Shown: positions 7,451-49,409, counted from the first letter of the stretch. The stretch: 64,000 nucleotides of DNA from Mytilus californianus (GCF_021869535.1 NW_026262593.1:26288001-26352000), one strand, 5' to 3'. Made by a program: numbers and translations. Notes: generated by a model not told the origin, from the letters alone.

Positions 7451-8536
7451 ATGGATGAGAATATGAAAAACAATACGGCGAAAACTATACAACAACTCAA
7501 TGATGAGAACTTCCAGAGACTCTTAGGACCTACTATATTTCTGATTATTATGCTGATTGTTGGAATACCAGGAAATTTAACAGTACTTATAATATATGGA
7601 CGAAAATATACTAAAAGTGTTTATAGGACTATAGTTTGGAATCTTGCTATTGCAGATCAGATATTCTGCACAGTAGGGATACCGTTTAACATAGCACGTG
7701 TTGTTCACTATTATTCTTTTCAAGGAGAATGGGCGTGTGTCGTGTTCGTCGTAATGCTTTATCTTCTCTTGTTATATTCCACACATCTTTTGATGTTGTT
7801 ATCCATCCACAGATTTCGGAAAATATGCATGCCACTAAAATCACAACTGACTGTAAGAAATGTAAATTACTGGGTCGTTGCTTGCCTGGGAATTTCTGTT
7901 GTACTTTCGTCTCCACAGTTTGCCCTATCCAAATTTAGAAGAATAGACATTGGTCAAAATTTAACTGGCACTACTTGTGCGATATCTCTCTCAAATCCGT
8001 CTATTTATCATACCGCTTTTAGCTATGGATTTCTATCTTTGTTTGTACTTTATACAATAGTTTTGATATTTATCTATTCCATGATCGGCAGACAAATGTA
8101 TACTCAAACACACCGGAGAAAGGAAATGCATGGTAATGGTATTCCGAGATCCATTTCAAGTAAGATGACAAAGATTGCCTTTGCCATTTCACTTGTGTTT
8201 GCTTTAAGCTACATTCCAGTCTTTGTTCTCCAAACAACGCGGAAAATGATAGCGGAAGAAGAATTAAGCACTGGTGCTTTTTCTTTTCTTAAAATTGCTG
8301 AGCGTCTTTACGTTGTTAATCATGTAGTGAATCCGTTTATATATGGAGTTTTTGATAATCAATTTAAGCAACATTTGAAAGAACTTGTCACTTTTAACTG
8401 TCCAATTTGGAGTTCACGGAAAAGTTCAGAATCACCTTCTTCACCAAAGTCGACCACCACCGGATCAACATCAACATCTTCCATGGATACATGTGAAAAC
8501 AGTGTCAGTGTAAATGAGATTGGAGCAAAATGCTGA
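7451..8536 (+). CDS. Intronless class A GPCR, copy A (361 aa), orphan peptide-receptor-like
   Basis: Seven hydrophobic segments with GN in TM1, LAxAD in TM2, C3.25, SIHRF at the DRY position, ECL2 Cys, SYIP in TM6 and NPFIY in TM7. The tail is Ser/Thr-rich. Confidence 0.95.
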   Translation: MDENMKNNTAKTIQQLNDENFQRLLGPTIFLIIMLIVGIPGNLTVLIIYGRKYTKSVYRTIVWNLAIADQIFCTVGIPFNIARVVHYYSFQGEWACVVFVVMLYLLLLYSTHLLMLLSIHRFRKICMPLKSQLTVRNVNYWVVACLGISVVLSSPQFALSKFRRIDIGQNLTGTTCAISLSNPSIYHTAFSYGFLSLFVLYTIVLIFIYSMIGRQMYTQTHRRKEMHGNGIPRSISSKMTKIAFAISLVFALSYIPVFVLQTTRKMIAEEELSTGAFSFLKIAERLYVVNHVVNPFIYGVFDNQFKQHLKELVTFNCPIWSSRKSSESPSSPKSTTTGSTSTSSMDTCENSVSVNEIGAKC

Positions 8537-10879
8537 CACTTTTTTTGAAAGTAACACACTTTGTAAAGCCGTAAAACTGTACGAGAGTAGATAAATGTGA
8601 ACGCTTGCGTTTAGTTAAAAATAATCTGAAACAAACGGGTGATCAATCAATTCTAATATGGTTTTGAGCTAAATCCAGAACTTTCAAAGAACTTATTCTA
8701 GCGACCGAAAACAGACACAAATAAGCCGGGTAATCGTTAAAGCAAAGTATGAGCAACCGACGTGTGTGTTCAGTCGATTTAACTTTATTCTAATTTGAAG
8801 ACGCTTTACCTCAGAAACATATGATTCTGACTTTATTTATTACTGTTCATGTTAGGATTCACTTGTGTTCAAATGTAAGATGATATTTTTGTAATGAACT
8901 TTATATTTATATTTACTTAATATACATTAGAGAAATTCAGATCGCAAATAATTATGCTTTATTTATTTTTGCGGAGCATCTTTGAAAAATTTAACTTTTA
9001 AGAACTGTTTATTTCTAAAGTCACAGGACTGCTTTGTTTTAAGTCATATCATTTTTAAGGGGCATATATAATCATTTATTTGGAAACTTGAATTTTTTTC
9101 TATTAGTTGAATTGTATTGGTTTGTATATTATCTACTATATTTTTTTCATCTTTGATTCAAAATCAGAGGAAAGAATTACGAAACTATATCATAACGCCT
9201 TTTTCCTCCCTAATTAATGTTATATGATGGGTTTCTAACGTCCTATCCTTAATAACATTATAAGCTATAAAGTCAAGGCAAATTAAGGTATTCATGAAAC
9301 CAGAAATCATGAAAATGTACGATGATGCTGCATGTTCTTCATCATAGGATCAAGTTGTCAGTACATCATAAAAATTTTAATTCATTCTTAACACCAAAAT
9401 GAGGAGTACTTCCCGACATTAGTAGTTATAACTGCTACATGATTATGACACCTGTTGAAAACGTTGATAACATTTTAAAAGCAAATACACATACTCTTAA
9501 AATAGATAAAAGGGACTTTAAAGATATTGAAATAAACATAAATATTTGTTATTAAATTTCTATACGTCTTTGTTAATATCTGTTTAAACAAATTTTCCTT
9601 CTTCCTGGTTTATATGCTATGACACTCCAAAATTGAACAAAGATTTTTATTTGCTAAACACACTTCTCAATAATTTGATTTCGAACCTTTCTAATGAGCG
9701 CCATTACAGATTATTTATTAAAATTGATATTACATGATATTTTCCTTATGATTTTTTTTAACCATTTAATACTGTGTATTTTTTTCAAATGTCTCTGTGG
9801 GATTTGATCTTAATATAATTGTACTGTAAACGATATTATATATACGTATTATAATTGTAAATAGTTGAAATAGTTTGTTTTTATTTATTTTTTATTTGCA
9901 TGCTTTCTGTTTGCCCAGCGAAAGGATAACTCAAGATACTGCACCGTTTACAATGGTTGGTATGAATTACTTTGACTTTGAAATTAAACAGAGAAGATGT
10001 ACTGTGAAACGCTATGGTGTGATATTTACATGTCAGAAAATCAGAGCGGTATAGGAGATATGGTATGATCACCAATGAGATAAATGTTCACCAAAGACAA
10101 ATAAACAATTCTCTTTTCGTTTTTTATTTAGAGATATACTCACGAAGTAAATTACATAGATATTCAATCTTTCAATAAAATTCTTTGTCAATTTCACCAT
10201 GATACAGCAAAAGATGCATAATAAACTTAATCGCTACGTTACGGTGTTAATCACGCATTGATCGTAATTATTATGTCTAAACAAACTCATAAACAGTGGC
10301 AATGTTACTTTGCTAAACTAACACCACAGTTTCGCAGTTCGGTCTGACAGGACACTAGAGTTTATAAGTCGTGCGTACATGTTTAGACAAATAAGGAGAT
10401 ATGGTATGATCACCAATGAGATAAATGTCCACCAAAGACAAATAAACAGTGATTGAAACAAATAGACCGTATTTCATTTTCGGAATCTGCGACACATGAC
10501 CTGAGAATTTGCAACACTTGACCTAAGAATTTGCAACACTTGAACTATTGACGTCTTAAAACAATTAATGTTGCATTGTTGCATCTGGAATTTTTCGTTT
10601 ATGCCGTCAAAATGTTATGGAAACGTCTGTGTTGATCAGTAATTGCGGACAAATAGCGATAAGGTACATGTTGTCGACTATCAGCCAGCATTTAATGAAG
10701 TTCACTGATTTTTTTTTTTTTGTTTTTTTTTTTTTTGTCAGATATTTAAAATCCACTGGTTTCATCTATTTATACCATTAAAAACTTTGCCCGCTAATCC
10801 CTCCTTTTCTTTTCATAATTATTTTACATATAGTGTCAAAATGTGTTTTTTTTAATTAAATGTTATTAAATCTTTGTTA

Positions 10880-15667: not shown

Positions 15668-16663
15668 TCAAAGCGTAGTTTCTGAAGTAGATTCCCTAGT
15701 ACTGCCTTTAGTTTCGTTACGACGCCAACTACATGTAACCAGTTCTTTAAATTGTTTCTTGAACTGATTGTCAAATAGTCCGTATATAAACGGGTTTGCC
15801 ACGTGGTTAACAACATAAAGTCTTTCCCCAATCCTTAACATTGCAAACTGGAAAGTGTTAAGATTATCCTCATCGACTGTTTTCGCCGTAATCTGAAGTA
15901 TGAACAGTGGAATATAACTCACTGCAAAAACCGTAGATATTGCAAAAGCAATTTTGGTCATCTTACTTGAAATAGCCTTCTGTGTATAGCTGGTGATATG
16001 GTTTTCTAGTCTTCTTTTATGCTGTATGTATAATTTCCGTCCTATAATTGAATAAAGAACGATCAAGACAATGGTATAAAATATAAACAAAGAGAGGAAA
16101 CCGTAACTAAAAGCAGTGGAATAAATTGACGGATTTGAAAGTGATATAGCACAGCTGTAACCAGTTAAGTTATACCCCACATTAATTTCTTCGTATTTCG
16201 AGAGGCCAAAATGTGGGGCAGATAGAATGAATGCAATGCAGAAGCAAGCAATTACCCAGCAATTGACGTTATCCACACTAATTTGTTGTCTCAATGGGAA
16301 GCAAATCTTTCGAAATCTGTGAATTGATAACAGTACTAATAGGTGTGTTGAATACAATAGCAGGAAATACAGCATAACAACAAACACGACACATGCCCAT
16401 TCTCCTTCAAATGAATAATAGTGTACTATCCGAGCAATGTTAAATGGTATCCCAATCGTACAGAAGACCTGATCCGCCACTGCTAGATTCCAGACAATTG
16501 TTCGGTGTACACTTCTAGCATATTTCTTTCCGTAAATAACAAGAACTGTGAGGTTACCAGGAACTCCAATTATTAATGTGATCCCAAGAAAAACTATAGG
16601 TGCCAATAATTTCCGAAACTTCTCATCATTAAGATCACCTATTGTCAAGGTTGAATTAGCCAT
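15668..16663 (-). CDS. Intronless class A GPCR, copy B1 (331 aa from MANST; frameshifted tail)
   Basis: Same 7TM motifs as copy A. The start is taken at the ATG homologous to its paralogs (16663) rather than the upstream TTG. Confidence 0.93.
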   Translation of the reverse strand: MANSTLTIGDLNDEKFRKLLAPIVFLGITLIIGVPGNLTVLVIYGKKYARSVHRTIVWNLAVADQVFCTIGIPFNIARIVHYYSFEGEWACVVFVVMLYFLLLYSTHLLVLLSIHRFRKICFPLRQQISVDNVNCWVIACFCIAFILSAPHFGLSKYEEINVGYNLTGYSCAISLSNPSIYSTAFSYGFLSLFIFYTIVLIVLYSIIGRKLYIQHKRRLENHITSYTQKAISSKMTKIAFAISTVFAVSYIPLFILQITAKTVDEDNLNTFQFAMLRIGERLYVVNHVANPFIYGLFDNQFKKQFKELVTCSWRRNETKGSTRESTSETTL

Positions 16664-18676
16664 GTGAAATTTACCATTACCAGTACAGGAATGCAAGCGT
16701 TTGCTTGTCATCAAATGCAAAATGCAAACATAGCTTTTCGATCCATGAGTATTAAATGAATTTATTTTCCTGGTATTAACGAAGGGAACGAGGAACTGTT
16801 TTTGTATAGATAAAATGCATTTGGATTGGCAAAATTAGGTTACTGCAACATTATTAAAACACTTTATCTTATCATAAGGAAAAAACAATGGACTATCTAA
16901 TCTCATACGTTCGTTGGCTATTTAGATACTATATAAGGTTTTATTTTTACAGAATAATAAACGTACTTCCCTAAAGAGTTATCTGGTTCATGCATAAATA
17001 TATATTTTAAGATTGAATACAGAAACCTGCTGATTATTATGTCATGGCAGATGTCTTCGACCAAGAGTTTTATCAAGGTTACTTCTTCAACTTAATACAT
17101 TGTACAAATACACAACATTATTGCGATACGTCAAATTATATCCCCATTTTACTCGTTGCGTTATTAAAATTTTATTTTAACTGAGTGATAATTACATTTG
17201 ATTAACCGACACATGTTTTACTTTTTGCCCCTCTGATAGTTGTTTTGTGCTTATTACTCATCTGATAATTCTAGTTACTTACAACTGTCCACATTCTTTG
17301 TGTGCCTATCGCACAATATAGTTGTTTTTACCATAAATTAGGCCGTTTTGTTTTCTCTTTTGAATTTAGTTATTATAGTTTACCGAACGGTGTGAGTTTT
17401 GTTAGTTAGTGTAGGGCGCGTACAGTGACCTGTAGTTGTTTAATTCTGATCATTTTGTCTTTGGTGGATAATGTTTCATTGGAGGCCACATCTCCAAATT
17501 TTCTTACAAGCGTGGGAATATGAAAGTATTATAATTGCGTGCAGTCTGTTCGTTACTTTATCGGTAATGTGAATCAAAATACATTTATATTACATGTTTC
17601 GTTTCTTTAGAAACATGTTGGACAACATACAACGATAATGCAAGCAGAAAATAAATGAGGAAATTCAAACCTCGTCAAAAACATCACATAACAACTCTAT
17701 ATTTTCAATTCTAGCGCTAGCAAGGGCGTCATTCGGTTTATTGAGAACTCTGTCCTTTGATTTACAATTGTGTTGAGTTTCATACAAAAAAAAGTCTATT
17801 GATCCAATTTGTGTGTGTATTTGATGTGTATTACATACCGTTTGATTATATACTTATGTCTAGTATTTTGAACGTATTACAATTGTTCTATTTATCTGCA
17901 TTTATTTTATTACTAAATGTACATGATTTCCAAGACGATAAAACAGCTGCATTTGTTAAAGCGAACAAATGATTACGCGTCGTAAAGAAGGGTAAAAAAG
18001 ACAAATACTTTTTTTTTCAAATACAACATGTACAAAGACAGAAAGGGTAAAAAAAGAAATATTTGTGCAAATACACCGACGATAATTAAACTTAAACAAA
18101 AATCATATCATATAAGACAATACATGAAAATACACTAGCTATCAACCAATGAAAATCCAGGATACTTATTTAAGGTTTACTTATGTGGAAAGTTGCATGG
18201 ATTGGAACAATGAAACTATAGAGCTTACATAAAACAGTGGAATAGAATCACATTGTTGTAGTTTACAATTCGATATTGACAACTGTAAACAAGAGACATT
18301 ACTATTTTAAAGGACAAATGACATACCAAAAAGAATCTGCAAGGGACGTTTGAAAAAAAGAAAGACTCTAGCGAGGATGACAATTCAGACTATGAATCGA
18401 TTGGAAGTAAAAAATAGAATAAACGTTCATTAAGTTGGAGACAAATCGAAAACAGTACCAGCTATGATATAATATGTACAGGTGCAAATAGAAACATATA
18501 GTTATTGATGAATATCAATACAGAAGAGGAACCGTATTAATAGAAACAAAACAAAAATGAGTACTTTACAACACTAGATAAATTGTGTTATGCATTGTAC
18601 ATCCGTTTTGGTCACATAGTTTCTGACGTTTCTACGTATTTATACATCCATGGTTTTCGATTTTTTTCAATTTAGC

Positions 18677-18715
18677 GTTCCTGATGAAGTTAAATCCAGA
18701 AGCGGTTGAGGCGCA
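18677..18715 (+). ncRNA. Highly decayed hammerhead-like motif
   Basis: gcgttc-CTGATGA-agttaaatcca-gaagcggttgaggcgc. The CTGATGA core is present but the GAAA and stem III are damaged. Confidence 0.3.
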
Positions 18716-20665
18716 CAAATTTAATTAAGTGTTATTTTCATTACAGTTTACTGGCTAAATGAGAATTTAGAAATGAAGCACGAGGAATTAAACCAAAGAT
18801 AATGGCGATTAAAAGAAACAAAACTTTACCATTGCTTTTGGTTGATAAATACTGATTGGATTAGTTATATAACATAAAATAGAGATCGAAACATATTCAA
18901 TGAAATCAGAGCAGAACAATGAAGCTTAGTACAACACCAGTACCAAACCATATTACTTACTCTAAAACTCCAGTGTAGAATATAAAAGAACGACGAATAC
19001 GGGAAGATAGCTTGATTCTTGTTAACATAGATCTTAAGATTTAAGGCAAATATAAGGAAAAGAACAGGATATTTCAGGCACCTGTAAGGAAGTTTTCATA
19101 TATAGGTTCCATACTACAAGGTGATTTCAAACATGGAGTTAAAGGAGGAATGTCATCAGCCATTACTCTATCTTGACTTAAGACAAATTGCAACATTCAG
19201 CAAACTCATTGGAAAATGTGTTTCAAAATTCCGAGCAAAGTCATTACAATTGTGTTTTATTAGGAGATATCGTGAACCTCCAGTGGGATCTTAGCCTTGC
19301 TCGGTGTTGAATGCTTAGGTTTTACTTGGAGATGGAGAACAGCAATGAAAGTGATTTTCCCATGCTTTTTCTTTTCATAAAGCGTGTTTTTAAGTTTCCT
19401 AATATTAAAATTAAATTAGCAGTTGCCTTTATAGTTAACCATTGTTCTATTGGTAAACCAAGGCTTATAAAGGTTTGTAACTATGAAATGAAATCAATTC
19501 ATGTTGCATTGGACATGTACAATTTGCCATGCTACCCGTATTACAAGTAAATGTAATCAGTGACTTTTTGTGTCTGAAAATTTCACATGGGTACAAAACG
19601 TGATATTGTTCGAGGAACCATGGAATGTGTTCACCTGGTTTTCCACTGTCATATGAACGTGTTCACATGATTCTATAACCAAATATTGTCCTTATTTGAC
19701 TTTTAGAAATCAGGTAAAACATCATTTAGTGTTACCACATTTAGTATTTCTATTACAAATAGTATCAGGTCCTTTAATTGACAAATAATGTCTTATTATT
19801 GATTCTCGAGTCACACATATTTGTAAATTCAAAATAAATTACAAACATGTAGCGCTTATATTGCAAAATAAACAAAAGTATAGTAAATCTTGGACAATCG
19901 ATGGAGCTAAGCAAGAAATAGATAAATTCATTAATTTCAATTTTTTTCTCAAATTTTATCGCTTCAGGAAAAGTATAAGTATTATATTACCGAGTACTGA
20001 GCTGCTAGACTAGTGATACACTTGGGGACTAGCATTTCATCAGCACATGTATCGATAATATTGTCTTTACAATCGTGGACTATTATACTCATACTTGTAA
20101 ATTGAGATATGTTGAATTCAAATATTGAAAGCGTTCAAAGTAGATATCATCAGAAAAGTCTCTTTTTTGTATTGTCATTTTCATGAAACAAATGTAGGCT
20201 TTCTAGAAAAAAAATACATGACTTAGATTATTTGACTACAATAAAAAGACCGCAACTAAATCTTGCACACTTTGTACCTCTATAAAAGGGAAATAGTTCA
20301 GCATTTATTTTGAAGTTTAACGTGTTCTTGAACCCAGTGAAACCTGATTTGGTGACAAGTATGCCTTTTATTTCAGAATGATTTGTAATCTGTAACCTTG
20401 ATTTTACTTCTTTTAGTTGCTGTTACTTGACTGAGTACCAGAATGTCCAACCACAGAGTAGGTAACCTGTCGAAAAATTATATACTCCGGAGTAAAAAGT
20501 CGGTAATATGAAAATAGTCTATTTCCTATAAGTATCTTGTTTGACAAATGTAAAGCATTGTTTTTATAATGATTAATCGTAGCATTGCTCCCGTCCTTTA
20601 ATTTCATAAGTTATAATTACAAGTAAAAGAATATTGTTAAAATAAATGTACTTGAGACATTTCTG

Positions 20666-35215: not shown

Positions 35216-35250
35216 GTTTCGTCTTCATCAGACTCATCAGGGACGCTCGA
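35216..35250 (-). ncRNA. Partial hammerhead motif (stem III lost)
   Basis: Minus strand gagcgtcc-CTGATGA-gtc tgatgaa gac-GAAAC followed by unrelated sequence. Same family as 4624-4668. Confidence 0.5.
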
Positions 35251-35513
35251 ATCAAAAAGGACATGAAGGTCAAATTAAATTTTGATTATATCTGTCGTGT
35301 TGAATTTATTTTTTTTAAACTTTTAATCGACTACGGTCTTGTCCATTTCGTTTCTTAATTGTGAATTAGTATCTTGTTTGACACATCTTAAGGATTGTTT
35401 TATTGAAAATAATTAAGTTACTAGTACAATTCGTGAGAGAGTATTAGTATCATTGATCCAGTCGTATAATTTCATAAGTTATCGCTACAATAAATGTATC
35501 TGAGACAATTATG

Positions 35514-37501: not shown

Positions 37502-37814
37502 TACGGTTGCCTATAATTGCTTACATTAACTCCATTTGAATTGTGTTAGATAGTTGTCTCATTGGCAATCTTACCACATCTTCTTATTTTTATATCAGTC
37601 TTTTAGATAATTTAATGTAAAGTAAAATTGGAGATAATCCATTATTCGGAGAAGTATATACGGTTGCCTATAATTGCTTACATTAACTTCATTTGAATTG
37701 TGGTAGATAGTTGTCTCATTGGCAATCTTACCACATCTTCTTATTTTTATATCAGTCCTTTAGATAATTTAATGTAAAGTAAAATTGGAGATAATCCATT
37801 ATTCGGAGAAGTAT
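37502..37814. repeat. Tandem duplication, 2 x ~157 bp
   Basis: tacggttgcc...ggagaagta occurs at 37502 and 37659 with a few substitutions. Confidence 0.9.
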
Positions 37815-38566
37815 GGTTATGTTGATTTGGATAATCAACGACACATTGGGAAAACATTTTCAAATCTTAAATTTGTTTGAAATTTTACATTTGCATTTCA
37901 TTATCAATCATATCAATCTGTGTATGCCACTGTAAACATATGCAAAATTTCAGACATAAATAGAGGCAACTAAGGTGATATTCAAATCTCGTTAAACGAC
38001 TAAGAAGACAAATCAAGGTAAAACCACAACTTTGGGAATCGCAATCACAGAAGCGAAAGAGAAATTGGAAAAAGCGTGATACTCAGGTTTATTTTTGGTG
38101 AATATACTTAAATCAAACAGCCATTGTTATTTGAAAAAGAAGTAAAATTTGTTTTGTAACTTTTGATACTCAACTTTACCAGTTTTCCACAATCTTGCAA
38201 AAAAAACCGGAAGAATGTTGATTAATGAGTAAGTTACTTAAAACACGGTCATCTGATTTGTCCGTAGAGACTAATGCTTTTTGTCATCTGCTGTAATGGA
38301 ACCTCATAGATTTACTATTATCATCTGTTTGACCCCAATGAAATTACAATTTAAGAAGCCACATTGAGTTTAGTCGTGACACTCATACTGGGCGTCTGCA
38401 AATTTCCATACCAGGGTCTAACTTATAGGTTATGTATAACCTATTGTTTATCATTTTTCAAAAACGTATACGAAGCTTAGTTGTTTTTCAGTTAAAAAAT
38501 AAACAAACGGTGACCTAAAATTGTGAATCGCTCTCCTAATTTAAGAAACATATTCGTAATTAGAAC

Positions 38567-40212
38567 GATTGAGTCCCTTTATACTTTTATACTGGATGTC
38601 GAAAAAGTCAAATTCTTCATGCGCGATTAGGAATGAATAGAAGTTCTTTAAACTGTCACTTGTTTCCAAGAAATTTAGTTTCTTCTCCTGACTGTCGCTG
38701 GGGTGATTTGGATACTAACTCACATTTTTAATTATTTTGCCCATTATATTCGGAAATAAGACAAGAAATGATAATCTCATTTGGAAGCCTCCAATTAACA
38801 GTACCAATGGACACTGAATAACTTACAAACGCTCAAATATGATTTCAAATGAAGAAAACATTAGTTTATTTCTTATGGTACAAAAGTTCATTATTAAATC
38901 TTAAAGGTTTACAAACTAATAATTCACACAATGTACATATAAGTATCTTATTAGTTGCATTTTTCTTTTCTTTTTCAGTTCATTATGAAACTCAACTGAC
39001 TTTATCAATATTTTTATTATGTAACAGAGCATGTAGTTTAGATTCATTAGCTCACCTGGTCTAAAAGGCCACGTGAGCTTTTCTCATCACTTGGCGTCCG
39101 TCGTCCGTCGTCCGTCGTCCGTCGTCGTCGTTCGTCGTTAACTTTTACAAAAATTTTCTCCTCTGAAACTACAGGACCAAATTTAACCAGACTTGGCCAC
39201 AATCATCATTGGGGTATCTTGTTTAAAAAATGTGTCTGATGACCCGGCCCGCCAACCAAGATAGCCGCCATGGCTAAAAATAGAACATGTGGGTAAAATG
39301 TAGATTTTGGCTTATATCTGTGATATAAAAGCATTGTGAGCAAATCTGACCGGGTAAAATTGTTCATCAGGTTTTGATCTATCTGTCCTGATCGAGTCCC
39401 TTTATACTTTTATACTGGATGTCGAAAAAGTCAAATTCTTCATGCGCGATTAGGAATGAATAGAAGTTCTTTAAACTGTCACTTGTTTCCAAGAAATTTA
39501 GTTTCTTCTCCTGACTGTCGCTGGGGTGATTTGGATACTAACTCACATTTTTAATTATTTTGCCCATTATATTCGGAAATAAGACAAGAAATGATAATCT
39601 CATTTGGAAGCCTCCAATTAACAGTACCAATGGACACTGAATAACTTACAAACGCTCAAATATGATTTCAAATGAAGAAAACATTAGTTTATTTCTTATG
39701 GTACAAAAGTTCATTATTAAATCTTAAAGGTTTACAAACTAATATTTCACACAATGTACATATAAGTATCTTATTAGTTGCATTTTTCTTTTCTTTTTCA
39801 GTTCATTATGAAACTCAACTGACTTTATCAATATTTTTATTATGTAACAGAGCATGTAGTTTAGATTCATTAGCTCACCTGGCCTAAAAGGCCACGTGAG
39901 CTTTTCTCATCACTTGGCGTCCGTCGTCCGTCGACCGTCGTCCGTCGTCGTCGTTCGTCGTTAACTTTTACAAAAATCTTCTCCTCTGAAACTACAGGAC
40001 CAAATTTAACCAGACTTGGCCACAATCATCATTGGGGTATCTTGTTTAAAAAATGTGTCTGATGACCCGGCCCGCCAACCAAGATAGCCGCCATGGCTAA
40101 AAATAGAACATGTGGGTAAAATGTAGATTTTGGCTTATATCTGTGATATAAAAGCATTGTGAGCAAATCTGACCGGGTAAAATTGTTCATCAGGTTTTGA
40201 TCTATCTGTCCT
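38567..40212. repeat. Tandem duplication, 2 x 823 bp (flank plus 5' end of a Helentron-type element)
   Basis: ga(t/c)gagtccctttatac...atctgtcct repeats at 38567 and 39390 and is nearly identical. Confidence 0.9.
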
Positions 40213-41185
40213 GAAATTTTCAGACAAATCAGACAACCCATTGTTTGGTTGCTGCCCCTGAATTGGTAGTTTTAAGAACATTTTGCAGTTTTTGGTTATT
40301 ATTTTCAATATTATTATAGATAGAGATAACTGTAAGCAGCAATAATGTACAGCAAAGTAAGATCTACAAATAAGTCAACATGACTAAAATGGTCAATTGA
40401 CTCGTTTAGGAGTTATTGCCCTTTATAGTCAATTTTTTGTTATCTTTTACAAAAATCTTCTCCTCTGAAACTACTGAGACAAATTTAACCAAATTTGGCC
40501 GCAATCATTATTAGGGTATCTAGTTTAAAAAATGTGTCCGATGACCCCGCCTACCAACCAATATGGCCGACATGGCTAAAAATAGAACATAGGGGTAAAA
40601 TGCAAGTTTTGTCTATTAATTTTTGAACCGTGATAAATAGAAAAAATCTGAAAGGAGCAAAAATGTTCAGAATGAGCTCTACCAATTGTCCAGATACGTC
40701 AAAACTGTTAGACAAATTTTTATAGGAGTTATTGCCCATAAATGACAAATTTTACCATTTTTTTTTTCATTTTTGCCCATTATCATGAAGACTATGACAT
40801 TTAGAGAGAAACATTTTTTTTTTCCCGTTATGCCTTATATGATTTATATTATAATAGATAAATAAACACTTTAAATCACAAAAATGATCAGCAAGGCAAG
40901 ATCTATCAAAAAGTCAAATGTTGCCAATATAGTTAGTAGACTGTCACTCTTCATAGGAGTGATTGCACTTAAATGAGAATTTTTTTTTTACCCTCTTTTG
41001 TGTTTTGAGCAAAAACTAAAGAAAATAGAGAGAAACTAAACAGACTAAAAGATCATTTATACAAGATCAACAAAATAGAGATTTTTTGTCATGAAGTCTA
41101 TTCTTGTCTAAAATGTTGGAGAGTGTCCTTTGTTTGATATGCACATAGACCAAGGTGAGCGAGTCCAGGGCTTTCAAAAAATATT
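39871..41185 (+). mobile_element. Helentron-type non-autonomous element (HINE/DINE-like)
   Basis: TT target, 5' AGCTCACCTG with partner GTGAGCT, a (CGTC)n/(CGT)n microsatellite, internal ~480-bp repeats and a 3' AGGTGAGC subTIR at ~41154. The 5' part is duplicated at 39049. Confidence 0.75.
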
Positions 41186-41513
41186 TGTGCCAGCCGGACA
41201 TTTTTTGTCTTATCCCGATTTTGATCCCTTCCCAGTGGGCACTCAACGTTGATACAACATTGAAATTTAGTTGAAATTATGTCGTGACGTTGATCAACTT
41301 AAATTCAACGTTGTTTCAACGTCAAGCTATTCAACGTTGACTATTCAACGTAGAATCAACGTTGAATTTACGTTTTACAAATCAACGTTAAAACTACAAC
41401 GTTTATTCAACGTTGGGTTAACGTCAGTCATTTAGGACAGACAAATGTATAAATAGTTGTTAAAATTGAAAGATACAAATATTATTGAGGCAGTGGCGGA
41501 TTCAGGTTGGGGA

Positions 41514-41637
41514 AATGAGGGGGGGGGGGGGTCCGGGACGATCAATATGCACTTGAATGGACATATGGTTGGAACCCCCCTTAAATCCTGGGTTGGAACC
41601 ATCCCCCTTTTTGAAAATGAGTGGATTTGCCCCTGTG
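41514..41637. mobile_element. Short degenerate MITE (cagtggcggatt...ggatttgcccctg)
   Basis: Imperfect terminal inverted repeats around G/C runs. Confidence 0.45.
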
Positions 41638-43026
41638 ATGAGCAGAGCAGACGTGAAGGGGAAGCTGAGTAGTATTGTAAACGATTGCAGGATAATGATC
41701 ATTGGCTGATCCAGAACTTGTTATAAGACTTGTAGGGGCAACTGACTGCCATTAAGAAGGGCCCGTTCAGCCATGCTTCAGATATTCCCCAATAAAACTT
41801 CTGCTTTTTCTATTTCATTTTTTTTTCTTTGTTTATTTTTTAAAGTATTTTAAATAAAAAAAAACAATAAACTACTATTATCCGATTTGTGTTTAATGAC
41901 CTTTAATCATTTCTCAATTTTTTGGGATATCCATCTCAAAACCTCAGTATTAATGCCATTTTTTTTTGTTACATTGTATATCTTAATGCATATTATATAT
42001 TTTTTCGATTTATGTTTTTAAAACAAATCGATTTTTGCTGCTGCTATCTCTTATTAAAATCAATGAAAGCATGGATTTGTATAGTCTCACTATACAAATC
42101 ATTGATGAAAGTATAATCATTAGAGCAATTTTAAATTTTGGCGGTATTTCAAGTTGAGTTCCGAAAAAAATTTCCTTTCGGATGCGCACGCAATCACCAC
42201 GCGCACCTCCTTTCGACGTCCATTTTGAAAATTATCGCGCAAGATTGAGAAACAAAGAGTACACAACTTCGCAATATTTAAAGACGATATATATAAAGAC
42301 AAAAGAAGATTAATCTCTAAAAACCTTTTGGAATTTAGCGTAAGTTTTTTTACAGTTACATTAACGATGAATCATGAGATATACCGCAAATAATAAAATA
42401 ATCTTTATATTTGTTTACTTTTGTCTTTGACTTTGTTCAGAGACCTTTAAGGTTAAAACTAATAAGCCTAACAAATTATTAGAAATAAACATGGCTTACT
42501 ATTAGGAACCTACTTATTTCGTGTGTATGTATCCACCAATTAACGAACTAACATTAACAAGAAATATCTGGACATGTACCCAATCATACCAGAAAAGGGG
42601 GGGATCGGGTCCGTTTGCCCTGATTACATGTTCGCTCTGAGTTTGGTGGTCTGTAGAGTCCGTTCGCCCTGGGTTCGTTCTCTCAATTTTTTCTTAATAT
42701 TGATTTTAATGTTTAAATGACAATAATTCTCACTGATTGTTGTAATACTAGCATTTGAAGCTGAAGGATTTACTTTAATAATTAAAACAACGTTTTGTTT
42801 TGATAAACTAGTCTAGTCAGCTTGGTATTAATAAAAGCCAGAATCTCAGGTGTTAGTGGAGTGGACCCCCTTTTTTATTTTTGGTTTGGATATTTTATTT
42901 GAAAATATTATTTTTTGTTTTATATTTCAACTTAGTTTAACTTATTTACGGTGTTCAAAGTCTTTTCAATGCGATTTAAAAATATTAGTAAAAAAAAAAC
43001 CTTCTATTCTTATTATCTTAGACCAA

Positions 43027-43420
43027 GTATAAGATGGTAGACTGTCTGTGTCAAGATCCTGGTGCTTACATTACAATGTTGTGGTATAATATGGTTGACT
43101 ATCAAGATCCTGGTGCTAACATTACAATGTTGTGGTATAAGATGGGTGACTGTCAAGATCCTGGTGCTTACATTACAATACAATATTGTAGTATAAGATG
43201 GGTGACTGTCAAGATCCTGGTGCTTACATTACAATGTTGTGGTATAAGATGGGTGACTGTCAAGATCCTGGTGCTTACATTACAATGTTGTGGTATAAGA
43301 TGGGTGACTGTCAAGATCCTGGTGCTTACATTACAATGTTGTGGTATAAGATGGGTGACTGTCAAGATCCTGGTGCTTAAATATAATGCTTTGGTATTAG
43401 ATTGGTGATTGTAAAAATCC
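43027..43420. repeat. 51-bp minisatellite, ~7-8 copies
   Basis: Unit gtataagatgggtgactgtcaagatcctggtgcttacattacaatgttgtg. It accounts for the repetitive ORFs 43034-43408, 43168-43365 and 43198-43380. Confidence 0.92.
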
Positions 43421-44167
43421 TCGTTCTTGAGCCCCCAAAAAATGTTTACAGTTAACGTTACCCCAAGTCACGTAATTTCCGTTGAGCTTGAATACAACAG
43501 AAAATAGTTGTATTTGTTAAATTTAGCATGAACTCATATTACATTTAATAAGTGTAGAAGAATGTTGTACACCCTGACCGAGATAAGGGATTTGTTGAAG
43601 AAGGATTACATAAGAGGTCAGAAGGAATATATATTCCAACAGATAGATGAGATCGACATACTTAAAGAAAAGGACATACAATTGGGTGAAGAAAAAGAGT
43701 ATGCTTTATGCGTAAGTAAAGTATTTAAAATTGTATGTTATGAAACTTGTGAAGTCAAATCTTATTATTTGATAAAATGGCCTTAACAGCAGGGAAAATC
43801 CTGATTGTTTAAATCTATCTTATTTGCAAAAGTAGCAAAAGGTAATGGATTCAAGTTATAACAACAATAGTAACTTCCTCAATCTAAAATTTTGATGAAA
43901 AGTTGTTGGTCTAAGTTATAACCAATGAGGTATGAAAATTAACGATGCTTATAAGTTATGTTTACTAAGTAATACTATGAATTTCAGAGTAAGTTTATAT
44001 ATACTTGTAAATAATTTCATTGCAAAGGAACGTTTAATGTACTGGCATTTTTTTTCTTCAGAAGAAATACATCATGCAGATTGGTGGGAAGGACTATAAA
44101 GAGCACATAAATAAAGCCATGCAAAGGTAAACATCTGATATGTGTATATTCTACCTAAAAACAATAC

Positions 44168-44432
44168 AGTCGCAGTGATGTAATGGTTAGCGTGCTGGCA
44201 AACCAAAGACTTGAAAATTGGTATTGCTGTTTCTTTGCTAAGCACCTACCATTAACGTATTAGATATGGTGGCCAGGTTGGGAACCATGTCTTTTTGCAG
44301 ACTTACTAGTTTAAAATCCTGCTCGGCCAGTCAGTCTAGTGAAAAGCAGGGTCAGTTTTCATTTCTGATTATCATGTTCTAAGACAGAATTTACATGCCA
44401 CTGGAAATTAAACACCAATCCATCCATCCATT
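44168..44432 (+). mobile_element. Degenerate tRNA-derived SINE (V-core-like) in intron
   Basis: A-box-like gtgatgtaatggttagcg, then aaaccaaagacttgaaaattggtattgctgtttctttgctaagcac, with a (CCAT)n tail. Confidence 0.55.
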
Positions 44433-45221
44433 CTCAAAAATTGGATGTAAAACCATATAATGAAAAAAAAATTTGTGACATTAAAGTACTGAATACATCC
44501 TTTAATCGTTGCAGTGGTTATTTACATCCTCTTTTTTTTTCTTTTTGTTGCAAAATACATAGATAAAACATTGAAACTAAACACCAGAACTGTGACTGTC
44601 TGCTGAAATTTATAAAAACATTGTGATGAAGAAAAAAATGGTTCCAAGGGGTTCATATCATTTTGGAAAAGTATGACCATTACCACATTTTTCGTTAATG
44701 TTTTTAAAGGTAAATGTTGATATTTTTAACTAAATAAAACTTGCATCATTTGTTTTTGTTTAAAGGTGTCTCACCAACAAACTCATGTCCATAATGAATA
44801 TGAAGGGGAAGAAAACAAAGAGGCATTTGGTGATTCCAATCTGTTCAAGATAATAAGAGGTAAGTAAGTCTTGATATAATTGTAAAAGACTTTCCCATTG
44901 GAATTCTGTTTCAGTTTTATAGTATCTGAAATCCTTATGTTAATGTCAACTGCTATTTCTTTTCTTTTCTGTTAGTGAGACAATTTTCAGTCATCATCTG
45001 TTTCAACATTACCTTTATTGCCACAAAGTGCAACTTAAGTTTAAATTCATGCATAAAAAAAAAATTATGCCATAAAAAAGCTTGGACATTGGTTTTAAAT
45101 GGACATGTCTACTGTTTTATTTTTATTTTTTAATGGTAGAAACTTCTTCGTATCAGATTAATGTACATTTATTTTATTCAAAATTCAGGGTTTTTTTGGG
45201 GCATGATATTGTGCAAAGTAT

Positions 45222-45493
45222 TTTTATGCCCCACCTACTATAGTAGATGGGCATTATGTTATCTGGTCTGTGCAACTGTTCGTTCGTCTGTTCTGCTTCA
45301 GGTTAAAGTTTTTGGTCAAGGAAGTTTTTGATTAAGTTGAAGTCGAATCAACTTGAAACTTGGTACACATGTTCCCTATTGTAGGATCTTTCAAAATTCA
45401 AATTAGTTTTTTTACCTAAATTTTACAATCCACTGAACATAGAAAATGATAGTGCAAGTGGGGCATCCATGTACCAGGGACACATTCTTGTTT
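45222..45493 (+). mobile_element. Short Helentron-type element in intron
   Basis: 5' ttttATGCCCCAC...GGGCAT, a ttcg microsatellite and a 3' GTGGGGCATC...cacattcttgtt end. Confidence 0.65.
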
Positions 45494-46927
45494 GTTATGT
45501 ATTAAAGCTATGATGTTCATCTTTCTATCACATTTTTGTAACAGTTTTTATTATGCAAGTCAAATTTATGTTCTCTTTTCTTTCAGATGCTGTTCTAACC
45601 TGCCACACAGAGGCAACTGAAACTAAAGTAATTGAGCAGTGCTCAAACTATTTGACGTATGCTCCATGAAGAAAAGGAGGAGTTTTAAGCCAAAAGAATA
45701 GTTTTCTTTTCAAAAAAAATAAATTTTTCTTTAAAAAAAATTTTTTTAACATTGGCCAGTTTAGTGTAAGTTGACAGGAAAAAAAGTACAGTGAAATTTA
45801 GAAATACTTTACTTGGTGTTCTTCATCTTTTTGTTTGGTTTACTTAAGCTGCTTATATAATGATTGTGGAGTACACAGCTTTGGTGATGTTATGGTGTCT
45901 GCTAAATTGCAATTTTGATCACCACTGATACCAAAGACTTCAAGATACATATAGGTAGATATAAGAAGATGTGGTATGAGTGCCAATGAGACAACTCAAG
46001 AACCACATATGCAGAAAACACACATAAAAGGTAAAATTCAGATTGACAAAAAGTCCATATAAAAGATATCTGAAATTGTCTTGCTATGTATTTGTGTTTC
46101 TGTCCCAAACTTGCTGCATTTACATGATTTTGGAGTTTTGGAGTAAGTGGGAAAACGTGGATCAACCAGAATCGAAACAATGTGCTGGAGTTGCATGATA
46201 CATGTTTTCCATTGCTTTGAGAAATTAATGATGTGCTAGAATAAAAGGCTTTGTTAATATTGAGGTACTTATCTTGATATTCTTACTGTCTTTACTCCTT
46301 GGTTTTGATTGTTATTGTTTTCTATTCTCTTTATTTAGTTAGTCTCTAGTAGAGATAAGAACGCATGATGGTATACTACCGTGAAATAAAAATCTAGTAG
46401 AGATATAAAGAAAGTATGATGGTATACTAACGTGAAATAAAAAAAAATGGCTTTTGTTATTTCATAGTTTAGATACCTCTATTGTATTTGAACAAGTGCC
46501 AATAAGGATTGATTTACATCGAGACCCATCACTTACCTAACTTCATCCAACCTACAATTGGCCTGATCTCAACCTTAATTGACCTGAATTCAACCTAATT
46601 TCAACCTAATCTGATCTGACTTCAACCTCACGCAACCTGATTTCAACGCAACTCGACCTGATGTCAATTTAACTTGACTAGATTTCAACCTGATTTCAAC
46701 ATGTTATCAACCTCACTTGACCTGATTTCAACAGGTTATCAACGTCAATACAACGTTGTAACTGTAACGTTGATTCAACGTCAGAATTTCAACATCATCT
46801 CAACTTTCAAAACTAACCCAAGTTTCAACGTTGTAATAACGTTGAAGTCTGACAGTAGATCAACGATGATACAACTTTATGTGCCTGCTGGGTTAAGACT
46901 ACGTATCAAGAGGCAATCATGCTAATC

Positions 46928-47674
46928 AGTTGGGCATCATATAAACAATGAATGATTGACATAAAAACGATATTAAACTTGACTTGAGCGACACAGGCTC
47001 TTTAGAGCCTCTAGTTTGTGTATATTGTACGATCAACGTCATTTTTCTTTTGCTGTCCACGTATAAATTGATATATATCACGTGTATCAACGCAATTCCC
47101 ACAATTGCCCTTATCGACGGTGCTAGTGATAGTTTTTTGGGGAATTAAGCTGTATAAAGCATCAAAAGCAAAAACTAGTTGGGCATCATATAAACAATGA
47201 ATGATTGACATAAAAACGATATTAAACTTGACTTGAGCGACACAGGCTCTTTAGCGCCTCTAGTTTGTGTATATTGGACGATCAACGTCATTTTTCTTTT
47301 GCTGTCCACATATAAATTGATATATATCACGTGTATTAACGCAATTCCCACAATGCCCTTATCGGCGGTGCTAGTGATAGTTTTTTGGGGAATTAAGCTG
47401 TATAAAGCATCAAAAGCAAAAACTAGTTGGGCATCATATAAACAATGAATGATTGACATAAAAACGATATTAAACTTGACTTAAGCGACACAGGCTCTTT
47501 AGAGCCTCTAGTTTGTGTGTATTGTACGATCAACGTCATTTTTCTTTTGCTGTCCACGTATAAATTGATATATATCACGTGTATCAACACATATTCCCAC
47601 AATTGCCCTTATCGGCGGTGCTAGTGATAGTTTTTTGGGGAATTAAGCTGTATAAAGCATCAAAAGCAAAAACT
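46928..47674. repeat. Tandem triplication, 3 x ~249 bp (element 3' hairpin plus flank)
   Basis: Units start at 46928, 47177 and 47425. Each contains gagcgacacAGGCTCTttAGAGCCTctagttt followed by flank homologous to ~23630-23800. Confidence 0.9.
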
Positions 47675-48383
47675 AAAGATCCTGATAGAACAATAAAAAA
47701 GGGTATTTGCCTCAGAGACTTGTAACCTTATGTAAGGTAAATATATCAAATTATAATTTGACAGTTGTAAAAAGAACAGAGGACTTTGGTGTACGATTTA
47801 ACAAGTAAAAGTGCTAATTTCATGTGGATGGATTTGAATTGTTTCAATACAGTCAAACAAAAGATGTACTCAAACCAAACACCGACAGGACTAGAAAAAT
47901 TGTGTGTGAATATTCTAGAAATTGCTCAAAGCGTTTACTTTCATGGACAAAGAATCATTGAATATCATAATAAAAGAATCGTAAAGGGTAACAGAAACCT
48001 TTGTCTCGCTTGCAATGGTTGCTGGTAGTGTAAAAGGGTAATTATGACGGCAAAGCTAAGTCCATTCATTAATAATATACCTAACATTTAAAACATATAT
48101 ATATATATATTTGCCCCAAAAAATAAGTCTATTTATCAGTAAAACATGGAAAATGAAAACAAATATTTTTTAAACTTTATTCTGGATACTGTCTTTTGTT
48201 CATGAAATAGCCTTTTCTCACTTTCATAATAATCTGTGAAGGTTATTGATATTAGAAAAAAACACTTTAACCACAAACCTAACTTCAACAATGAAGACAC
48301 CGACGACAGAATATAGGATCGCTTTGTATCGTTTCCCTGGCTGTCGTCGGTGTATCGTCAAATTTATACCTTACATTATTCCG

Positions 48384-49409
48384 TTACACATTAGTATTTA
48401 TAAACTGCTCAAGCTGAACTTCTGTTACAGTAGTAGAATCTCTATTGTTGCTTTTTGTTTCGTCATGGCGCCAATTGCACGTAATAAGTTTTTTAAAATG
48501 TTTCTTGAATTGGTTATCAAATATCCCGTATATAAATGGGTTTGCAACGTGGTTGACAAGATAAAGTCTTTCGCCAATCCTTAACATTGCAAACTGGAAA
48601 GTGTTTAGATCGTCCTTATCGATCATTTTCTCTGTAATCTGAAGTATAAACAGTGGAATGTAACTCACTGCAAAAACCATAGATATTGCAAAAGCGATTT
48701 TGGTCATTTTACTTGAAATAGCCTTCTGTGTAGAGCTGGTGATTTTCTTTTTGATTCGTCCCGTATGCTGTATGTATAATTTCCGTCCTATAATCGAGTA
48801 TATCACGACTAAGACAATTGTGTAAACAAAGAACAATGCTAGAAAACCGTAACTGAATGCAGTGGAATAAATTGACGGATTGGAAAGTGATATAGCACAG
48901 CTAAAGCCAGTTAAGTTATATCCAACTTTTATTTTTTCGTATTTAGAGAGGCCAAAATGTGGTGCAGATAGGATGAGTGCAATGCTGAAGCAAGCAATTA
49001 CCCAGTAGTTGACGTTATCCAAACTTATTTGTGTTCTCAGCGGGAAGCATATCTTCCGGAATCTGTGAATGGATAGAAGTAGTAATAAGTGTGTTGAATA
49101 CAACAGTAGGAAATACAGCAAAACAACAAACACAACACATGCCCATTCTCCTTCAAATGAATAATAGTGTACTATCCGAGCAATGTTAAATGGTATTCCT
49201 ATCGTACAGAATATCTGATCCGCCACTGCTAGATTCCAAACAATAGTTCTGTGTACGCTTTTAACATATTTCTTACCATAAATAACCAGAACTACGATGT
49301 TCCCAGGAACTCCAATTATTAAAGTAATCACGATAAAAACTATAGGTGGCAATAAATTCCTGAATTTTTCATCTTCGAAATCACTTATTGTCATTGTTAA
49401 ATTAGCCAT
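48384..49409 (-). CDS. Intronless class A GPCR, copy D (341 aa from MANLT)
   Basis: 7TM motifs; start set at the homologous ATG; ends in TNV. Confidence 0.94.
   Translation of the reverse strand: MANLTMTISDFEDEKFRNLLPPIVFIVITLIIGVPGNIVVLVIYGKKYVKSVHRTIVWNLAVADQIFCTIGIPFNIARIVHYYSFEGEWACVVFVVLLYFLLLYSTHLLLLLSIHRFRKICFPLRTQISLDNVNYWVIACFSIALILSAPHFGLSKYEKIKVGYNLTGFSCAISLSNPSIYSTAFSYGFLALFFVYTIVLVVIYSIIGRKLYIQHTGRIKKKITSSTQKAISSKMTKIAFAISMVFAVSYIPLFILQITEKMIDKDDLNTFQFAMLRIGERLYLVNHVANPFIYGIFDNQFKKHFKKLITCNWRHDETKSNNRDSTTVTEVQLEQFINTNV

What the first reader, a model, noticed from the sequence alone, without database searches (positions are those of the whole stretch)
7451..49409. Six-gene tandem array of intronless, short-N-terminus orphan class A GPCRs: candidate bivalve chemoreceptor cluster
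Seen: six single-exon CDSs with ~20-residue N-termini (NxT/NxS sequon next to the start), all with intact 7TM cores, within 42 kb, showing duplication, chimerism and tail loss. Inference: this birth-and-shuffle pattern resembles chemosensory receptor arrays more than single-copy neuropeptide receptors. The TM3 pocket face is strongly hydrophobic (VVMLYFLLL, Leu at 3.32, no aminergic Asp), hinting at hydrophobic ligands.
Basis: partly seen in the sequence, partly recalled or inferred. Interest (0 to 1): 0.75.

Follow-up and report, generated by a model that had tools for sequence, protein, structure and literature searches.

The report
Mussel orphan GPCR six-gene array
Six neighbouring, intact, intron-free rhodopsin-type receptor genes in a mussel (Mytilus) genome form a conserved cluster of a mussel-only receptor branch. 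This kind of cluster is already described in molluscs, and the near-identical ligand pockets argue against each copy sensing a different chemical.

Summary
The only six ORFs of 200 aa or more in the 64 kb window are full-length class A GPCRs: G1 7451-8536 (+), and G2 to G6 on the minus strand. All have short N-termini, a sequon beside the start codon and intact 7TM cores.

G4 is a real chimera: a G2-like body with a G6-like tail and 3' flank. G2 and G4 lost their tails independently. The G6-G5-G4-G3-G2 block fits one unequal-crossover duplication of an ancestral three-gene array.

The genes belong to a 46-leaf clade whose named members are all Mytilus. It lacks D3.49 (usually HRF), and its shared signature is Y5.50, SY[IL]P and NHVANPFIY. 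This clade sits inside a very large bivalve orphan radiation. No known peptide receptor is an orthologue; about a dozen families tie at 17-23% identity.

The chemoreceptor reading is only partly supported. The array is shared copy for copy with M. coruscus, and omega is 0.12-0.23. Pocket and extracellular parts are the most constrained (omega 0.10-0.15). Change is concentrated in ICL3 and the C-tail.

Low-level sense transcripts exist for G3, and probably for G4 and G6. The tissue is unknown.

Lineage-specific class A tandem arrays in Lophotrochozoa, Mytilus included, were published in 2025, so this is a new member of a known kind.

The parts
7451..8536 (+). G1: 361-aa class A GPCR, the old divergent paralogue (62-66% aa identity to G2-G6), tail-to-tail with G2
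   Evidence: ORF; 7tm_1 at 102.5 bits. The exact protein is annotated in GCA_021869535.1. Its 90% cluster holds M. galloprovincialis and M. edulis proteins. Omega 0.15 against the M. trossulus orthologue.
15668..16663 (-). G2: 331-aa GPCR ('C' type). Tail shortened by a 5-nt deletion between about 15677 and 15678, giving a frameshift and a TGA stop.
   Evidence: Orthologues of 331 aa in M. coruscus (P0004) and M. trossulus (P0003). Omega 0.12.
20666..21691 (-). G3: 341-aa GPCR ('B' type, duplicate partner of G5)
   Evidence: 94% identical to M. coruscus P0001; omega 0.23. The CDS and 3' region 20230-21567 are covered by near-identical contigs in three probable RNA runs from two studies, and by sense-oriented reads of a stranded RNA run.
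28435..29424 (-). G4: 329-aa chimeric GPCR. The body (nt 1 to about 975) is G2-like; the tail and 3' flank are G6-like. The stop TAG at 28435-28437 replaces a sense codon, and the relic of the old tail runs to a TAA at about 28396-28398.
   Evidence: Sliding-window identity, tail alignment, flank matches. The M. coruscus counterpart has no ORF and at least three frame changes. Reads laid on G2 carry G4-specific letters.
35514..36539 (-). G5: 341-aa GPCR ('B' type)
   Evidence: Orthologues in M. coruscus (P0002), M. trossulus and M. galloprovincialis. Omega 0.20.
48384..49409 (-). G6: 341-aa GPCR ('A' type)
   Evidence: 98% identical to M. coruscus P0006; M. galloprovincialis orthologue P0007. 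Omega 0.14. Reads with a G6-specific letter in the stranded RNA run.
15688..28449 (-). Duplication unit 1: G4 tail, intergenic region, G3, intergenic region, G2 body
   Evidence: A collinear chain of matches to unit 2; the non-coding parts are 79-84% identical.
28449..48434 (-). Duplication unit 2: G6 tail, intergenic region, G5, intergenic region, G4 body. It is lengthened by about 9 kb of inserted DNA between about 38.5 and 47.5 kb.
   Evidence: The G6-G5 spacing is 4.2 kb in M. coruscus against 11.8 kb here.

Best explanation
This is a conserved tandem array of six functional paralogues. They belong to a class A GPCR subfamily so far seen only in Mytilus, the 'HRF clade', with H3.49-R-F, C4.50, Y5.50, S-Y6.48-[IL]-P and N7.45-H7.46. 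That clade is one branch of a very large bivalve orphan radiation with a peptide-receptor-like fold, in which none of the 205 sampled members has W6.48.

Shown: an old duplication gave G1 and the ancestor of G2-G6. Further duplication gave an A-B-C array. One unequal crossover between C and A then produced G6-G5-G4(C/A hybrid)-G3-G2. This happened before the split from M. coruscus. Since then the copies have been kept by purifying selection.

Inferred: the ligand pocket is almost unchanged among copies, while ICL3, the C-tail and the flanks diverge. The copies therefore most likely recognise the same or a very similar polar or charged ligand, through contacts such as R2.64, N2.61, Q6.55 and E7.39. 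They would differ in regulation, desensitisation or place of expression. They should signal through G proteins, because R3.50, Y5.58, NPxxY and F8.50 are intact.

Open: whether the ligand is waterborne or endogenous. My odds are about 30% environmental cue, 30% lineage-specific endogenous peptide or hormone, 10% microbial or immune cue, and the rest other.
For: Six intact 7tm_1 ORFs and no fragments. A confident 7TM + H8 model.

The 46-leaf clade lacking D3.49 has support 100, and all named members are Mytilus. The exhaustive search gives 1,519 representatives at E<=1e-30. The core family scores 322-464 bits, then there is a plateau at about 220-260 bits. Relatives in oyster, scallop and clam carry mutually inconsistent automatic names: CCK-like, tyramine, capa, tachykinin, M3, beta-2, orexin, TAAR4.

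Best solved-structure matches tie across NPY2R, PrRPR, NMUR1, CCK1R, BRS3, opioid and orexin receptors at E about 1e-17 to 1e-12 and 17-23% identity.

Omega is 0.14-0.23 between paralogues and 0.12-0.23 between orthologues. By region: pocket 0.10 (0.03-0.22), extracellular parts 0.145, intracellular TM halves 0.12, loops plus tail 0.41. Pocket identity is given.

The two duplication units are collinear, with uniform 79-84% non-coding identity. M. coruscus has the same order.

Transcripts.
Against: No ligand, tissue or signalling data exist. Generic residue numbers were assigned by counting from motifs, not from model coordinates, so some 'pocket' positions may be misassigned. Gene conversion between copies (mosaic similarity of G3; low dS in the extracellular half of TM7) could mimic pocket conservation.

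Many clade members come from unnamed Logan or ENA assemblies, so restriction to Mytilus is shown only for named sequences.

The timing of the duplication is ambiguous. In M. trossulus, G5-like and G2 orthologues flank a relic of the G3 5' flank with no G4. Yet the units are more alike (79-84%) than window versus M. trossulus non-coding DNA (68-73%).

H3.49, T3.40, Y5.50 and Y6.48 replace canonical activation switches, so normal G-protein signalling is assumed, not shown.
Confidence: 0.8

Rival explanations
1. One reading: a chemosensory receptor cluster in which duplication and shuffling diversify odorant or tastant recognition, tuned to hydrophobic ligands.
For: Lineage-specific, tandem, intronless CDS, short N-termini, low transcript level. 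This is the same profile as published candidate chemoreceptors in Aplysia (PMC2700072) and lophotrochozoan lineage-specific expansions (PMC11886862). Across the wider 42-row Mytilus family, extracellular TM halves are more variable than intracellular ones (entropy 1.40 vs 0.98, p=3e-4), and positions 3.33, 5.42, 6.55 and 6.58 vary.
Against: Within the array the pocket is the most conserved part (omega 0.10), with 40 of 47 positions identical in G2-G6. There are 1:1 orthologues across Mytilus species and no pseudogene in the window. R2.64, N2.61 and E7.39 are invariant, which does not fit a purely hydrophobic ligand. There is no tissue evidence.
Confidence: 0.3
2. Receptors for an endogenous, lineage-specific (neuro)peptide or hormone. 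The duplicates would be subfunctionalised by tissue or by signalling tail.
For: The nearest solved structures are all peptide receptors, and the model has an ECL2 beta-hairpin. The pocket is conserved under strong purifying selection while ICL3 and the C-tail diverge. Orthologues are stable across species.
Against: There is no orthology to any known peptide receptor family. The genes lie in a radiation of at least 1,500 clusters at 50% identity, far more than known bivalve peptide systems. No candidate ligand is known.
Confidence: 0.3
3. Sensors of microbial or algal metabolites on gill or haemocytes, that is, an immune or feeding-related role, in line with the general expansion of bivalve immune receptors.
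For: Only the lineage-specific expansion pattern and low bulk expression.
Against: There are no immune genes or domains in this window and no direct evidence.
Confidence: 0.1
4. Redundant, decaying duplicates with no individual function.
For: C-tail truncations in G2 and G4. The G4 counterpart in M. coruscus appears broken.
Against: All six ORFs are intact in AT-rich DNA where no other ORF exceeds 124 aa. Omega is 0.12-0.23 in every comparison. Transcripts were detected.
Confidence: 0.03

Closest known systems
Lineage-specific expansions (LSEs) of class A GPCRs in Lophotrochozoa (Nath et al. 2025, Mol Biol Evol, PMC11886862)
   Same: Class A receptors without 1:1 orthologues at family or order level, in tandem arrays. 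Mytilus genomes were included in that study, and about 22% of Mytilus LSEs have intra-genus 1:1 orthologues, as seen here. That paper proposes them as chemosensory candidates.
   Different: The paper reports high entropy and positive selection at extracellular, ligand-facing parts and retention of DRY. This array has a conserved pocket under purifying selection and HRF in place of DRY. I could not check whether these six genes are in their lists, because no supplements are held.
Aplysia californica candidate chemoreceptors AcCRa/b/c (Cummins et al. 2009, PMC2700072)
   Same: For AcCRb: intronless, 319-364 aa, short N-terminus, genomic clusters spaced 9-13 kb with transposons between, a non-canonical DRY (ERC), and TM3 the most conserved part.
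   Different: Homology to AcCRs was not tested because no sequences were at hand. AcCRs have shown rhinophore and tentacle expression; these genes have no tissue data.
Peptide receptors of the vertebrate rhodopsin beta/gamma groups (NPY2R/NPY4R, PrRPR, OX1R/OX2R, CCK1R, NMUR1, opioid, GHSR)
   Same: They are the best sequence and fold matches. Shared features are the ECL2 beta-hairpin, the C3.25-C45.50 cysteine pair, N1.50, D2.50, R3.50 and NPxxY.
   Different: Identity is only 17-23%, many families tie, and none is an orthologue. D3.49, W4.50, P5.50 and W6.48 are all replaced.
Vertebrate odorant receptor and TAAR gene arrays
   Same: Single-exon CDS, tandem arrays built by unequal crossover, and low expression per gene. 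From memory, ORs also have Tyr at 6.48. zTAAR13c is among the top fold matches.
   Different: There is no specific sequence relationship. OR arrays show pocket diversification and many pseudogenes; this array shows neither.

Membership tests
Class A (rhodopsin-type) GPCR, Pfam PF00001 | Full-length match to the 7tm_1 profile above the gathering score | tested here: met
   All six score 102-108 bits against a cut-off of 30.5, over profile 1-3 to 260 of 260.
Class A (rhodopsin-type) GPCR, Pfam PF00001 | Seven TM helices plus helix 8; N1.50, D2.50, R3.50, the C3.25-C45.50 pair, NPxxY | tested here: met
   AF2 model with pLDDT 85.7 and the expected helices. These positions are invariant in the six genes and the family.
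Class A (rhodopsin-type) GPCR, Pfam PF00001 | Canonical microswitches D/E3.49, W4.50, P5.50, CWxP (typical of the class, not required for membership) | tested here: not met
   HRF, C4.50, Y5.50 and SY[IL]P across the 42-row Mytilus family. None of 205 superfamily rows has W6.48.
Lophotrochozoan class A lineage-specific expansion (Nath et al. 2025) | No 1:1 orthologue outside the family or order; a paralogous clade restricted to one lineage | tested here: met
   A 46-leaf clade with support 100 whose named members are all Mytilus; oyster, scallop and clam sequences fall outside it. Caveat: many leaves are unnamed assemblies.
Lophotrochozoan class A lineage-specific expansion (Nath et al. 2025) | Tandem clustering in the genome | tested here: met
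   Six genes in 42 kb. The same array is present in M. coruscus, M. trossulus and M. galloprovincialis.
Lophotrochozoan class A lineage-specific expansion (Nath et al. 2025) | Raised variability or positive selection at extracellular, ligand-facing positions | tested here: not met
   Within the array, omega is 0.10 for the pocket and 0.145 for extracellular parts, against 0.12 for intracellular TM halves. At the wider family level the feature is met (entropy 1.40 vs 0.98).
Chemosensory receptor (functional class) | Expression in chemosensory epithelia and response to external cues | not testable with these tools
   Only low-level transcripts in runs of unknown tissue.
Conserved bilaterian neuropeptide receptor orthogroups (NPY/NPF, CCK/SK, orexin/allatotropin, PrRP, NMU/capa) | 1:1 orthology, or clearly highest similarity to one family | tested here: not met
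   The profile against PDB gives a best E of 1.9e-17 with about a dozen families within a few orders of magnitude. Foldseek identities are 17-23%. A tree against curated deorphanised receptors could not be built because no reference sequences are available by id.
Aminergic receptors | Asp at 3.32 | tested here: not met
   L3.32 in all six genes and in 34 of 42 family rows; none has Asp.

The most novel reading that the evidence does not exclude
The HRF clade could be a true bivalve chemoreceptor family, which would be among the first for the class. In that reading, six pocket-identical copies are deployed in different tissues or larval stages to detect one ecologically key polar waterborne cue, for example a settlement, spawning or food cue. 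The receptors would activate through a non-canonical switch set (H3.49, T3.40, Y5.50, Y6.48).
Probability: 0.25. Interest if true: 0.6.

Novelty: new member of a known kind. Interest (0 to 1): 0.3.

Why it matters
Bivalve chemoreception is poorly understood. A 2024 paper still states that candidate chemosensory GPCRs were unknown for the class (PMC11682238). A compact, fully intact array that is conserved across species would be a convenient test case: one ligand screen could serve six near-identical pockets.

The clean three-to-five gene unequal-crossover history is a tidy example of how such arrays grow. The family-wide replacement of DRY, PIF and CWxP residues is of some interest for GPCR activation.

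The genes are already annotated, at least in part. The general phenomenon was published for 238 lophotrochozoan genomes. Nothing here yet ties the array to chemosensation.

Tried and rejected
- Pfam scan of the ten longest non-GPCR ORFs in the window: no families.
- A bacterial-type promoter and terminator scan was uninformative for this eukaryote.
- Literature searches for Mytilus with HCRTR2, and for Mytilus GPCR with settlement, gave nothing on these genes.
- No supplements of Nath et al. are held, so I could not check whether these genes are in their LSE lists.
- The Logan contig L005 (a G1 orthologue from another species) is collinear with the genome and so cannot separate RNA from DNA.
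- Reads laid on G2 turned out to carry G4- and G6-specific letters, so G2's own transcription is not shown.
- The internal stop in the M. trossulus B gene was first read as pseudogenisation. It only trims the last 8 codons.
- Dating the segmental duplication from the CDS tree was rejected as unreliable. G3 is a mosaic, and flank identities conflict with the tree.
- Pocket analysis on model coordinates was not possible, because coordinates are not exposed.
Full report
**1. Observation**

The window has no N runs. A mechanical ORF scan finds only six ORFs of 200 aa or more, and the next longest is 124 aa. They lie at 7451-8536 (+) and, on the minus strand, within 15668-16720, 20666-21691, 28435-29442, 35514-36539 and 48384-49502.

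Using the ATG conserved among copies, the CDSs are:
- G1 7451-8536
- G2 15668-16663
- G3 20666-21691
- G4 28435-29424
- G5 35514-36539
- G6 48384-49409

All six match Pfam 7tm_1 over the whole profile at 102-108 bits, against a cut-off of 30.5. tblastn with the six proteins finds no other copy or fragment in the window.

The alignment shows 81% mean column identity. Each copy has an NxS/T sequon at residue 3 (7 in G1) and an invariant NLTG sequon in ECL2. N1.50, D2.50, C3.25, R3.50, C45.50, Y5.58, P6.50 and NPFIY are all present.

An AlphaFold2 model of G3, built on a 51-sequence alignment, has pLDDT 85.7 and pTM 0.84. It shows seven helices, helix 8 and a beta-hairpin in ECL2.

Two small caveats apply. 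G2 and G6 also have non-conserved upstream in-frame ATGs. 'Single exon' is shown only for the coding part.

**2. Organism and orthologues**

The exact G1 protein is encoded on a 74.8-Mb record of GCA_021869535.1. From memory, and from an earlier scan note, this is the California mussel, Mytilus californianus.

The word-based protein search finds 45 relatives. All named ones are Mytilus, the best being M. coruscus at 94%. A tree of these, a CDS tree and locus comparisons show 1:1 orthologues:
- In M. coruscus, G6, G5, G3 and G2 lie in the same order and orientation on one contig, 4-5 kb apart.
- The M. coruscus stretch orthologous to G4 is 89% identical in DNA. It has no ORF over 85 aa and at least three frame changes. 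This is an apparent pseudogene, unless these are indel errors in that assembly.
- M. trossulus has a G5-like gene (with a stop 8 codons early), the G2 orthologue and an inverted G1 orthologue. A relic of the G3 5' flank lies between the first two, and there is no G4.
- M. galloprovincialis has G6 and G5-like orthologues side by side. It also has two G1-like proteins on the same contig.

**3. How the array was built**

G1 is old: 63-65% nucleotide identity to the others, with dS saturated. G2-G6 are 84-93% identical, with dS 0.20-0.54.

Self-comparison shows that unit 1 (15688-28449) and unit 2 (28449-48434) are collinear along their whole length:
- G2 body and upstream match G4 body and upstream.
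- G3 and its upstream match G5 and its upstream.
- The G4-G3 spacer matches the region downstream of G6.
- The G4 tail and 3' flank match the G6 tail and 3' flank.

The non-coding parts are uniformly 79-84% identical. This is what a single unequal crossover between the last gene (C, G2-like) and the first gene (A, G6-like) of an A-B-C array predicts: A-B-[C/A hybrid]-B-C, which is G6-G5-G4-G3-G2.

Sliding windows put the switch near nt 975 of G4. Identity is 92-97% to G2 before that point, and G6 is the best match after it. M. coruscus shares the hybrid and the order, so the event predates that split.

Whether it predates the split from the M. edulis group is unclear. The G3 relic in M. trossulus and the CDS tree say yes. 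The flank identities (79-84% between units, 68-73% window to M. trossulus) say no. G3 itself looks like a mosaic produced by gene conversion.

The tail losses are independent. G2 has a 5-nt deletion and frameshift, shared with M. coruscus and M. trossulus. G4 has a nonsense codon followed by an in-frame relic of the old tail. Unit 2 is inflated by about 9 kb of inserted DNA.

**4. What family it is**

A profile of the six proteins against all PDB sequences gives NPY2R at 1.9e-17. PrRPR, NMUR1, CCK1R, BRS3, opioid, ghrelin, NPFF and orexin receptors follow within a few orders of magnitude. Foldseek with the model gives the same mixture, plus ETB, SSTR2, A2A and a fish TAAR, at E about 1e-9 to 1e-10 and 17-23% identity. 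No family stands out, so the genes are not 1:1 orthologues of a known peptide receptor.

A profile search brings in scallop, oyster, clam and gastropod proteins. Their automatic names disagree with one another: CCK-A-like, tachykinin 86C, tyramine 2, capa, M3, beta-2, orexin-1, TAAR4.

The exhaustive HMMER search counts 1,519 representatives (clusters at 50% identity) at E<=1e-30. The core family scores 322-464 bits, followed by a long plateau at about 220-260 bits.

In a 205-row alignment none has W6.48; Y occurs in 145 rows and F in 53. Most keep DRY. The window genes fall in a 46-leaf clade with support 100. In it, 3.49 is H, or rarely Y or C, and all named members are Mytilus. The signature of this clade is HRF, C4.50, Y5.50, SY[IL]P and NHVANPFIY. 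R2.64, N2.61 and F2.60 are invariant, and E7.39 is near-invariant.

M. coruscus has about 13 members on at least five contigs.

**5. Selection and the chemoreceptor question**

Nei-Gojobori omega is 0.14-0.23 for all pairs among G2-G6. It is 0.12-0.23 for G1, G2, G3, G5 and G6 against their orthologues. All copies are therefore maintained.

By region, pooled over the ten G2-G6 pairs, with bootstrap intervals where computed:
- 47 generic pocket positions: 0.10 (0.03-0.22)
- Extracellular TM halves plus ECLs: 0.145 (0.10-0.21)
- Intracellular TM halves: 0.12 (0.06-0.19)
- Cytoplasmic loops plus proximal C-tail: 0.41 (0.24-0.75)
- ICL3 alone: 0.65
- C-tail alone: 0.55

40 of the 47 pocket positions are identical in G2-G6, and 34 of 47 in all six genes. 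This is the opposite of the ligand-facing diversification reported for lophotrochozoan LSEs (PMC11886862, section read) and expected of odorant-type arrays.

Across the wider 42-row family, extracellular halves are more variable (entropy 1.40 vs 0.98, p=3e-4). Positions 3.33, 5.42, 6.55 and 6.58 change there. Ligand divergence may therefore exist between subfamilies, but not within this array.

TM3 is indeed hydrophobic with L3.32. Even so, the conserved R2.64, N2.61, Q6.55, K6.59, E7.39 and Y7.42 argue for a polar or charged ligand contact. Residue numbering was done by counting from motifs, not from coordinates.

**6. Expression**

In three small runs that are probably RNA (two studies), near-identical contigs cover the G3 CDS and its 3' region (20230-21567). 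The intergenic DNA is empty apart from two short repeats.

In a stranded RNA run from the genome's own study, 31 reads were laid from about 6% of the run. Nearly all had the first mate on the plus strand, as expected for minus-strand genes in the usual library type.

The reads laid on G2 carry letters diagnostic of G4 (15854, 16046) and G6 (16451). G3 is therefore transcribed, and G4 and G6 probably are, all at a low level. G2, G5 and G1 were not assessed. Tissue is unknown because run labels are coded.

**7. Comparison with known systems and verdict**

Tandem arrays of lineage-specific class A GPCRs have been catalogued across 238 lophotrochozoan genomes, including four Mytilus genomes, and proposed as chemoreceptors (PMC11886862).

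The Aplysia AcCRb genes are strikingly similar in build: intronless, 319-364 aa, short N-terminus, clustered 9-13 kb apart, ERC for DRY, TM3 most conserved. They are expressed in rhinophores (PMC2700072). For bivalves, candidate chemosensory GPCRs were still called unknown in 2024 (PMC11682238).

The array is thus a new, well-preserved member of a known kind. The orphan, lineage-specific reading is supported. The chemosensory reading remains a hypothesis at about 30%, and the conserved pocket and slow turnover weaken it.

Interest is modest (0.3). It would rise if sensory-tissue expression or an external ligand were shown.

Noticed in passing
window 12603-14709 (direct repeats 12609-13275 and 14019-14685): A 2.1-kb insertion bounded by two 667-bp direct repeats that are 99.4% identical. 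It is absent from the orthologous M. coruscus site (L001 about 17809-17812 joins window 12602 and 14710), so it is a recent mobile-element insertion between G1 and G2.
   Followed up: partly
window 38567-40214: Two head-to-tail copies of an 825-bp unit, 99.4% identical. They lie inside about 9 kb of extra DNA (38.5-47.5 kb) that separates G6 from G5 here but not in M. coruscus, where the spacing is 4.2 kb. The extra DNA overlaps the CACTA-like element of note s1-318189.
   Followed up: partly
window 51863-52650 and 52930-54544: Two satellite-like tandem arrays with a period of roughly 120-135 bp and 78-92% identity between copies. They sit next to a strong negative GC skew (-0.21) at 54-56 kb. 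ORFs of 90-107 aa inside them have no Pfam match.
   Followed up: no
window 20433-20527 and 18492-18891: Short interspersed repeats. One lies in the G3 3' region. Both reach very high summed depth in RNA-type contigs and continue into many unrelated contigs, which suggests a transcribed SINE- or MITE-like element.
   Followed up: no
window 46928-47675: Tandem duplication with a period of about 250 bp, 97% identical, just downstream of G6.
   Followed up: no
L007 1995-3020 (M. trossulus): The G5-like gene of M. trossulus has a stop 8 codons before the usual one. This is a third independent trimming of the distal C-tail in this family. No gene was listed there in the look-up table.
   Followed up: partly
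L001 6019-7042 (M. coruscus): The G4 counterpart in M. coruscus is split over three reading frames, and its tail is only 65-70% identical. It is either a pseudogene or the result of indel errors in that assembly.
   Followed up: partly
window 16664-16963, 21692-21991, 29425-29724, 36540-36839, 49410-49709: The 300 nt upstream of G2-G6 keep several short conserved blocks in all five copies despite 64% mean identity. These could be shared promoter or 5'UTR elements.
   Followed up: no
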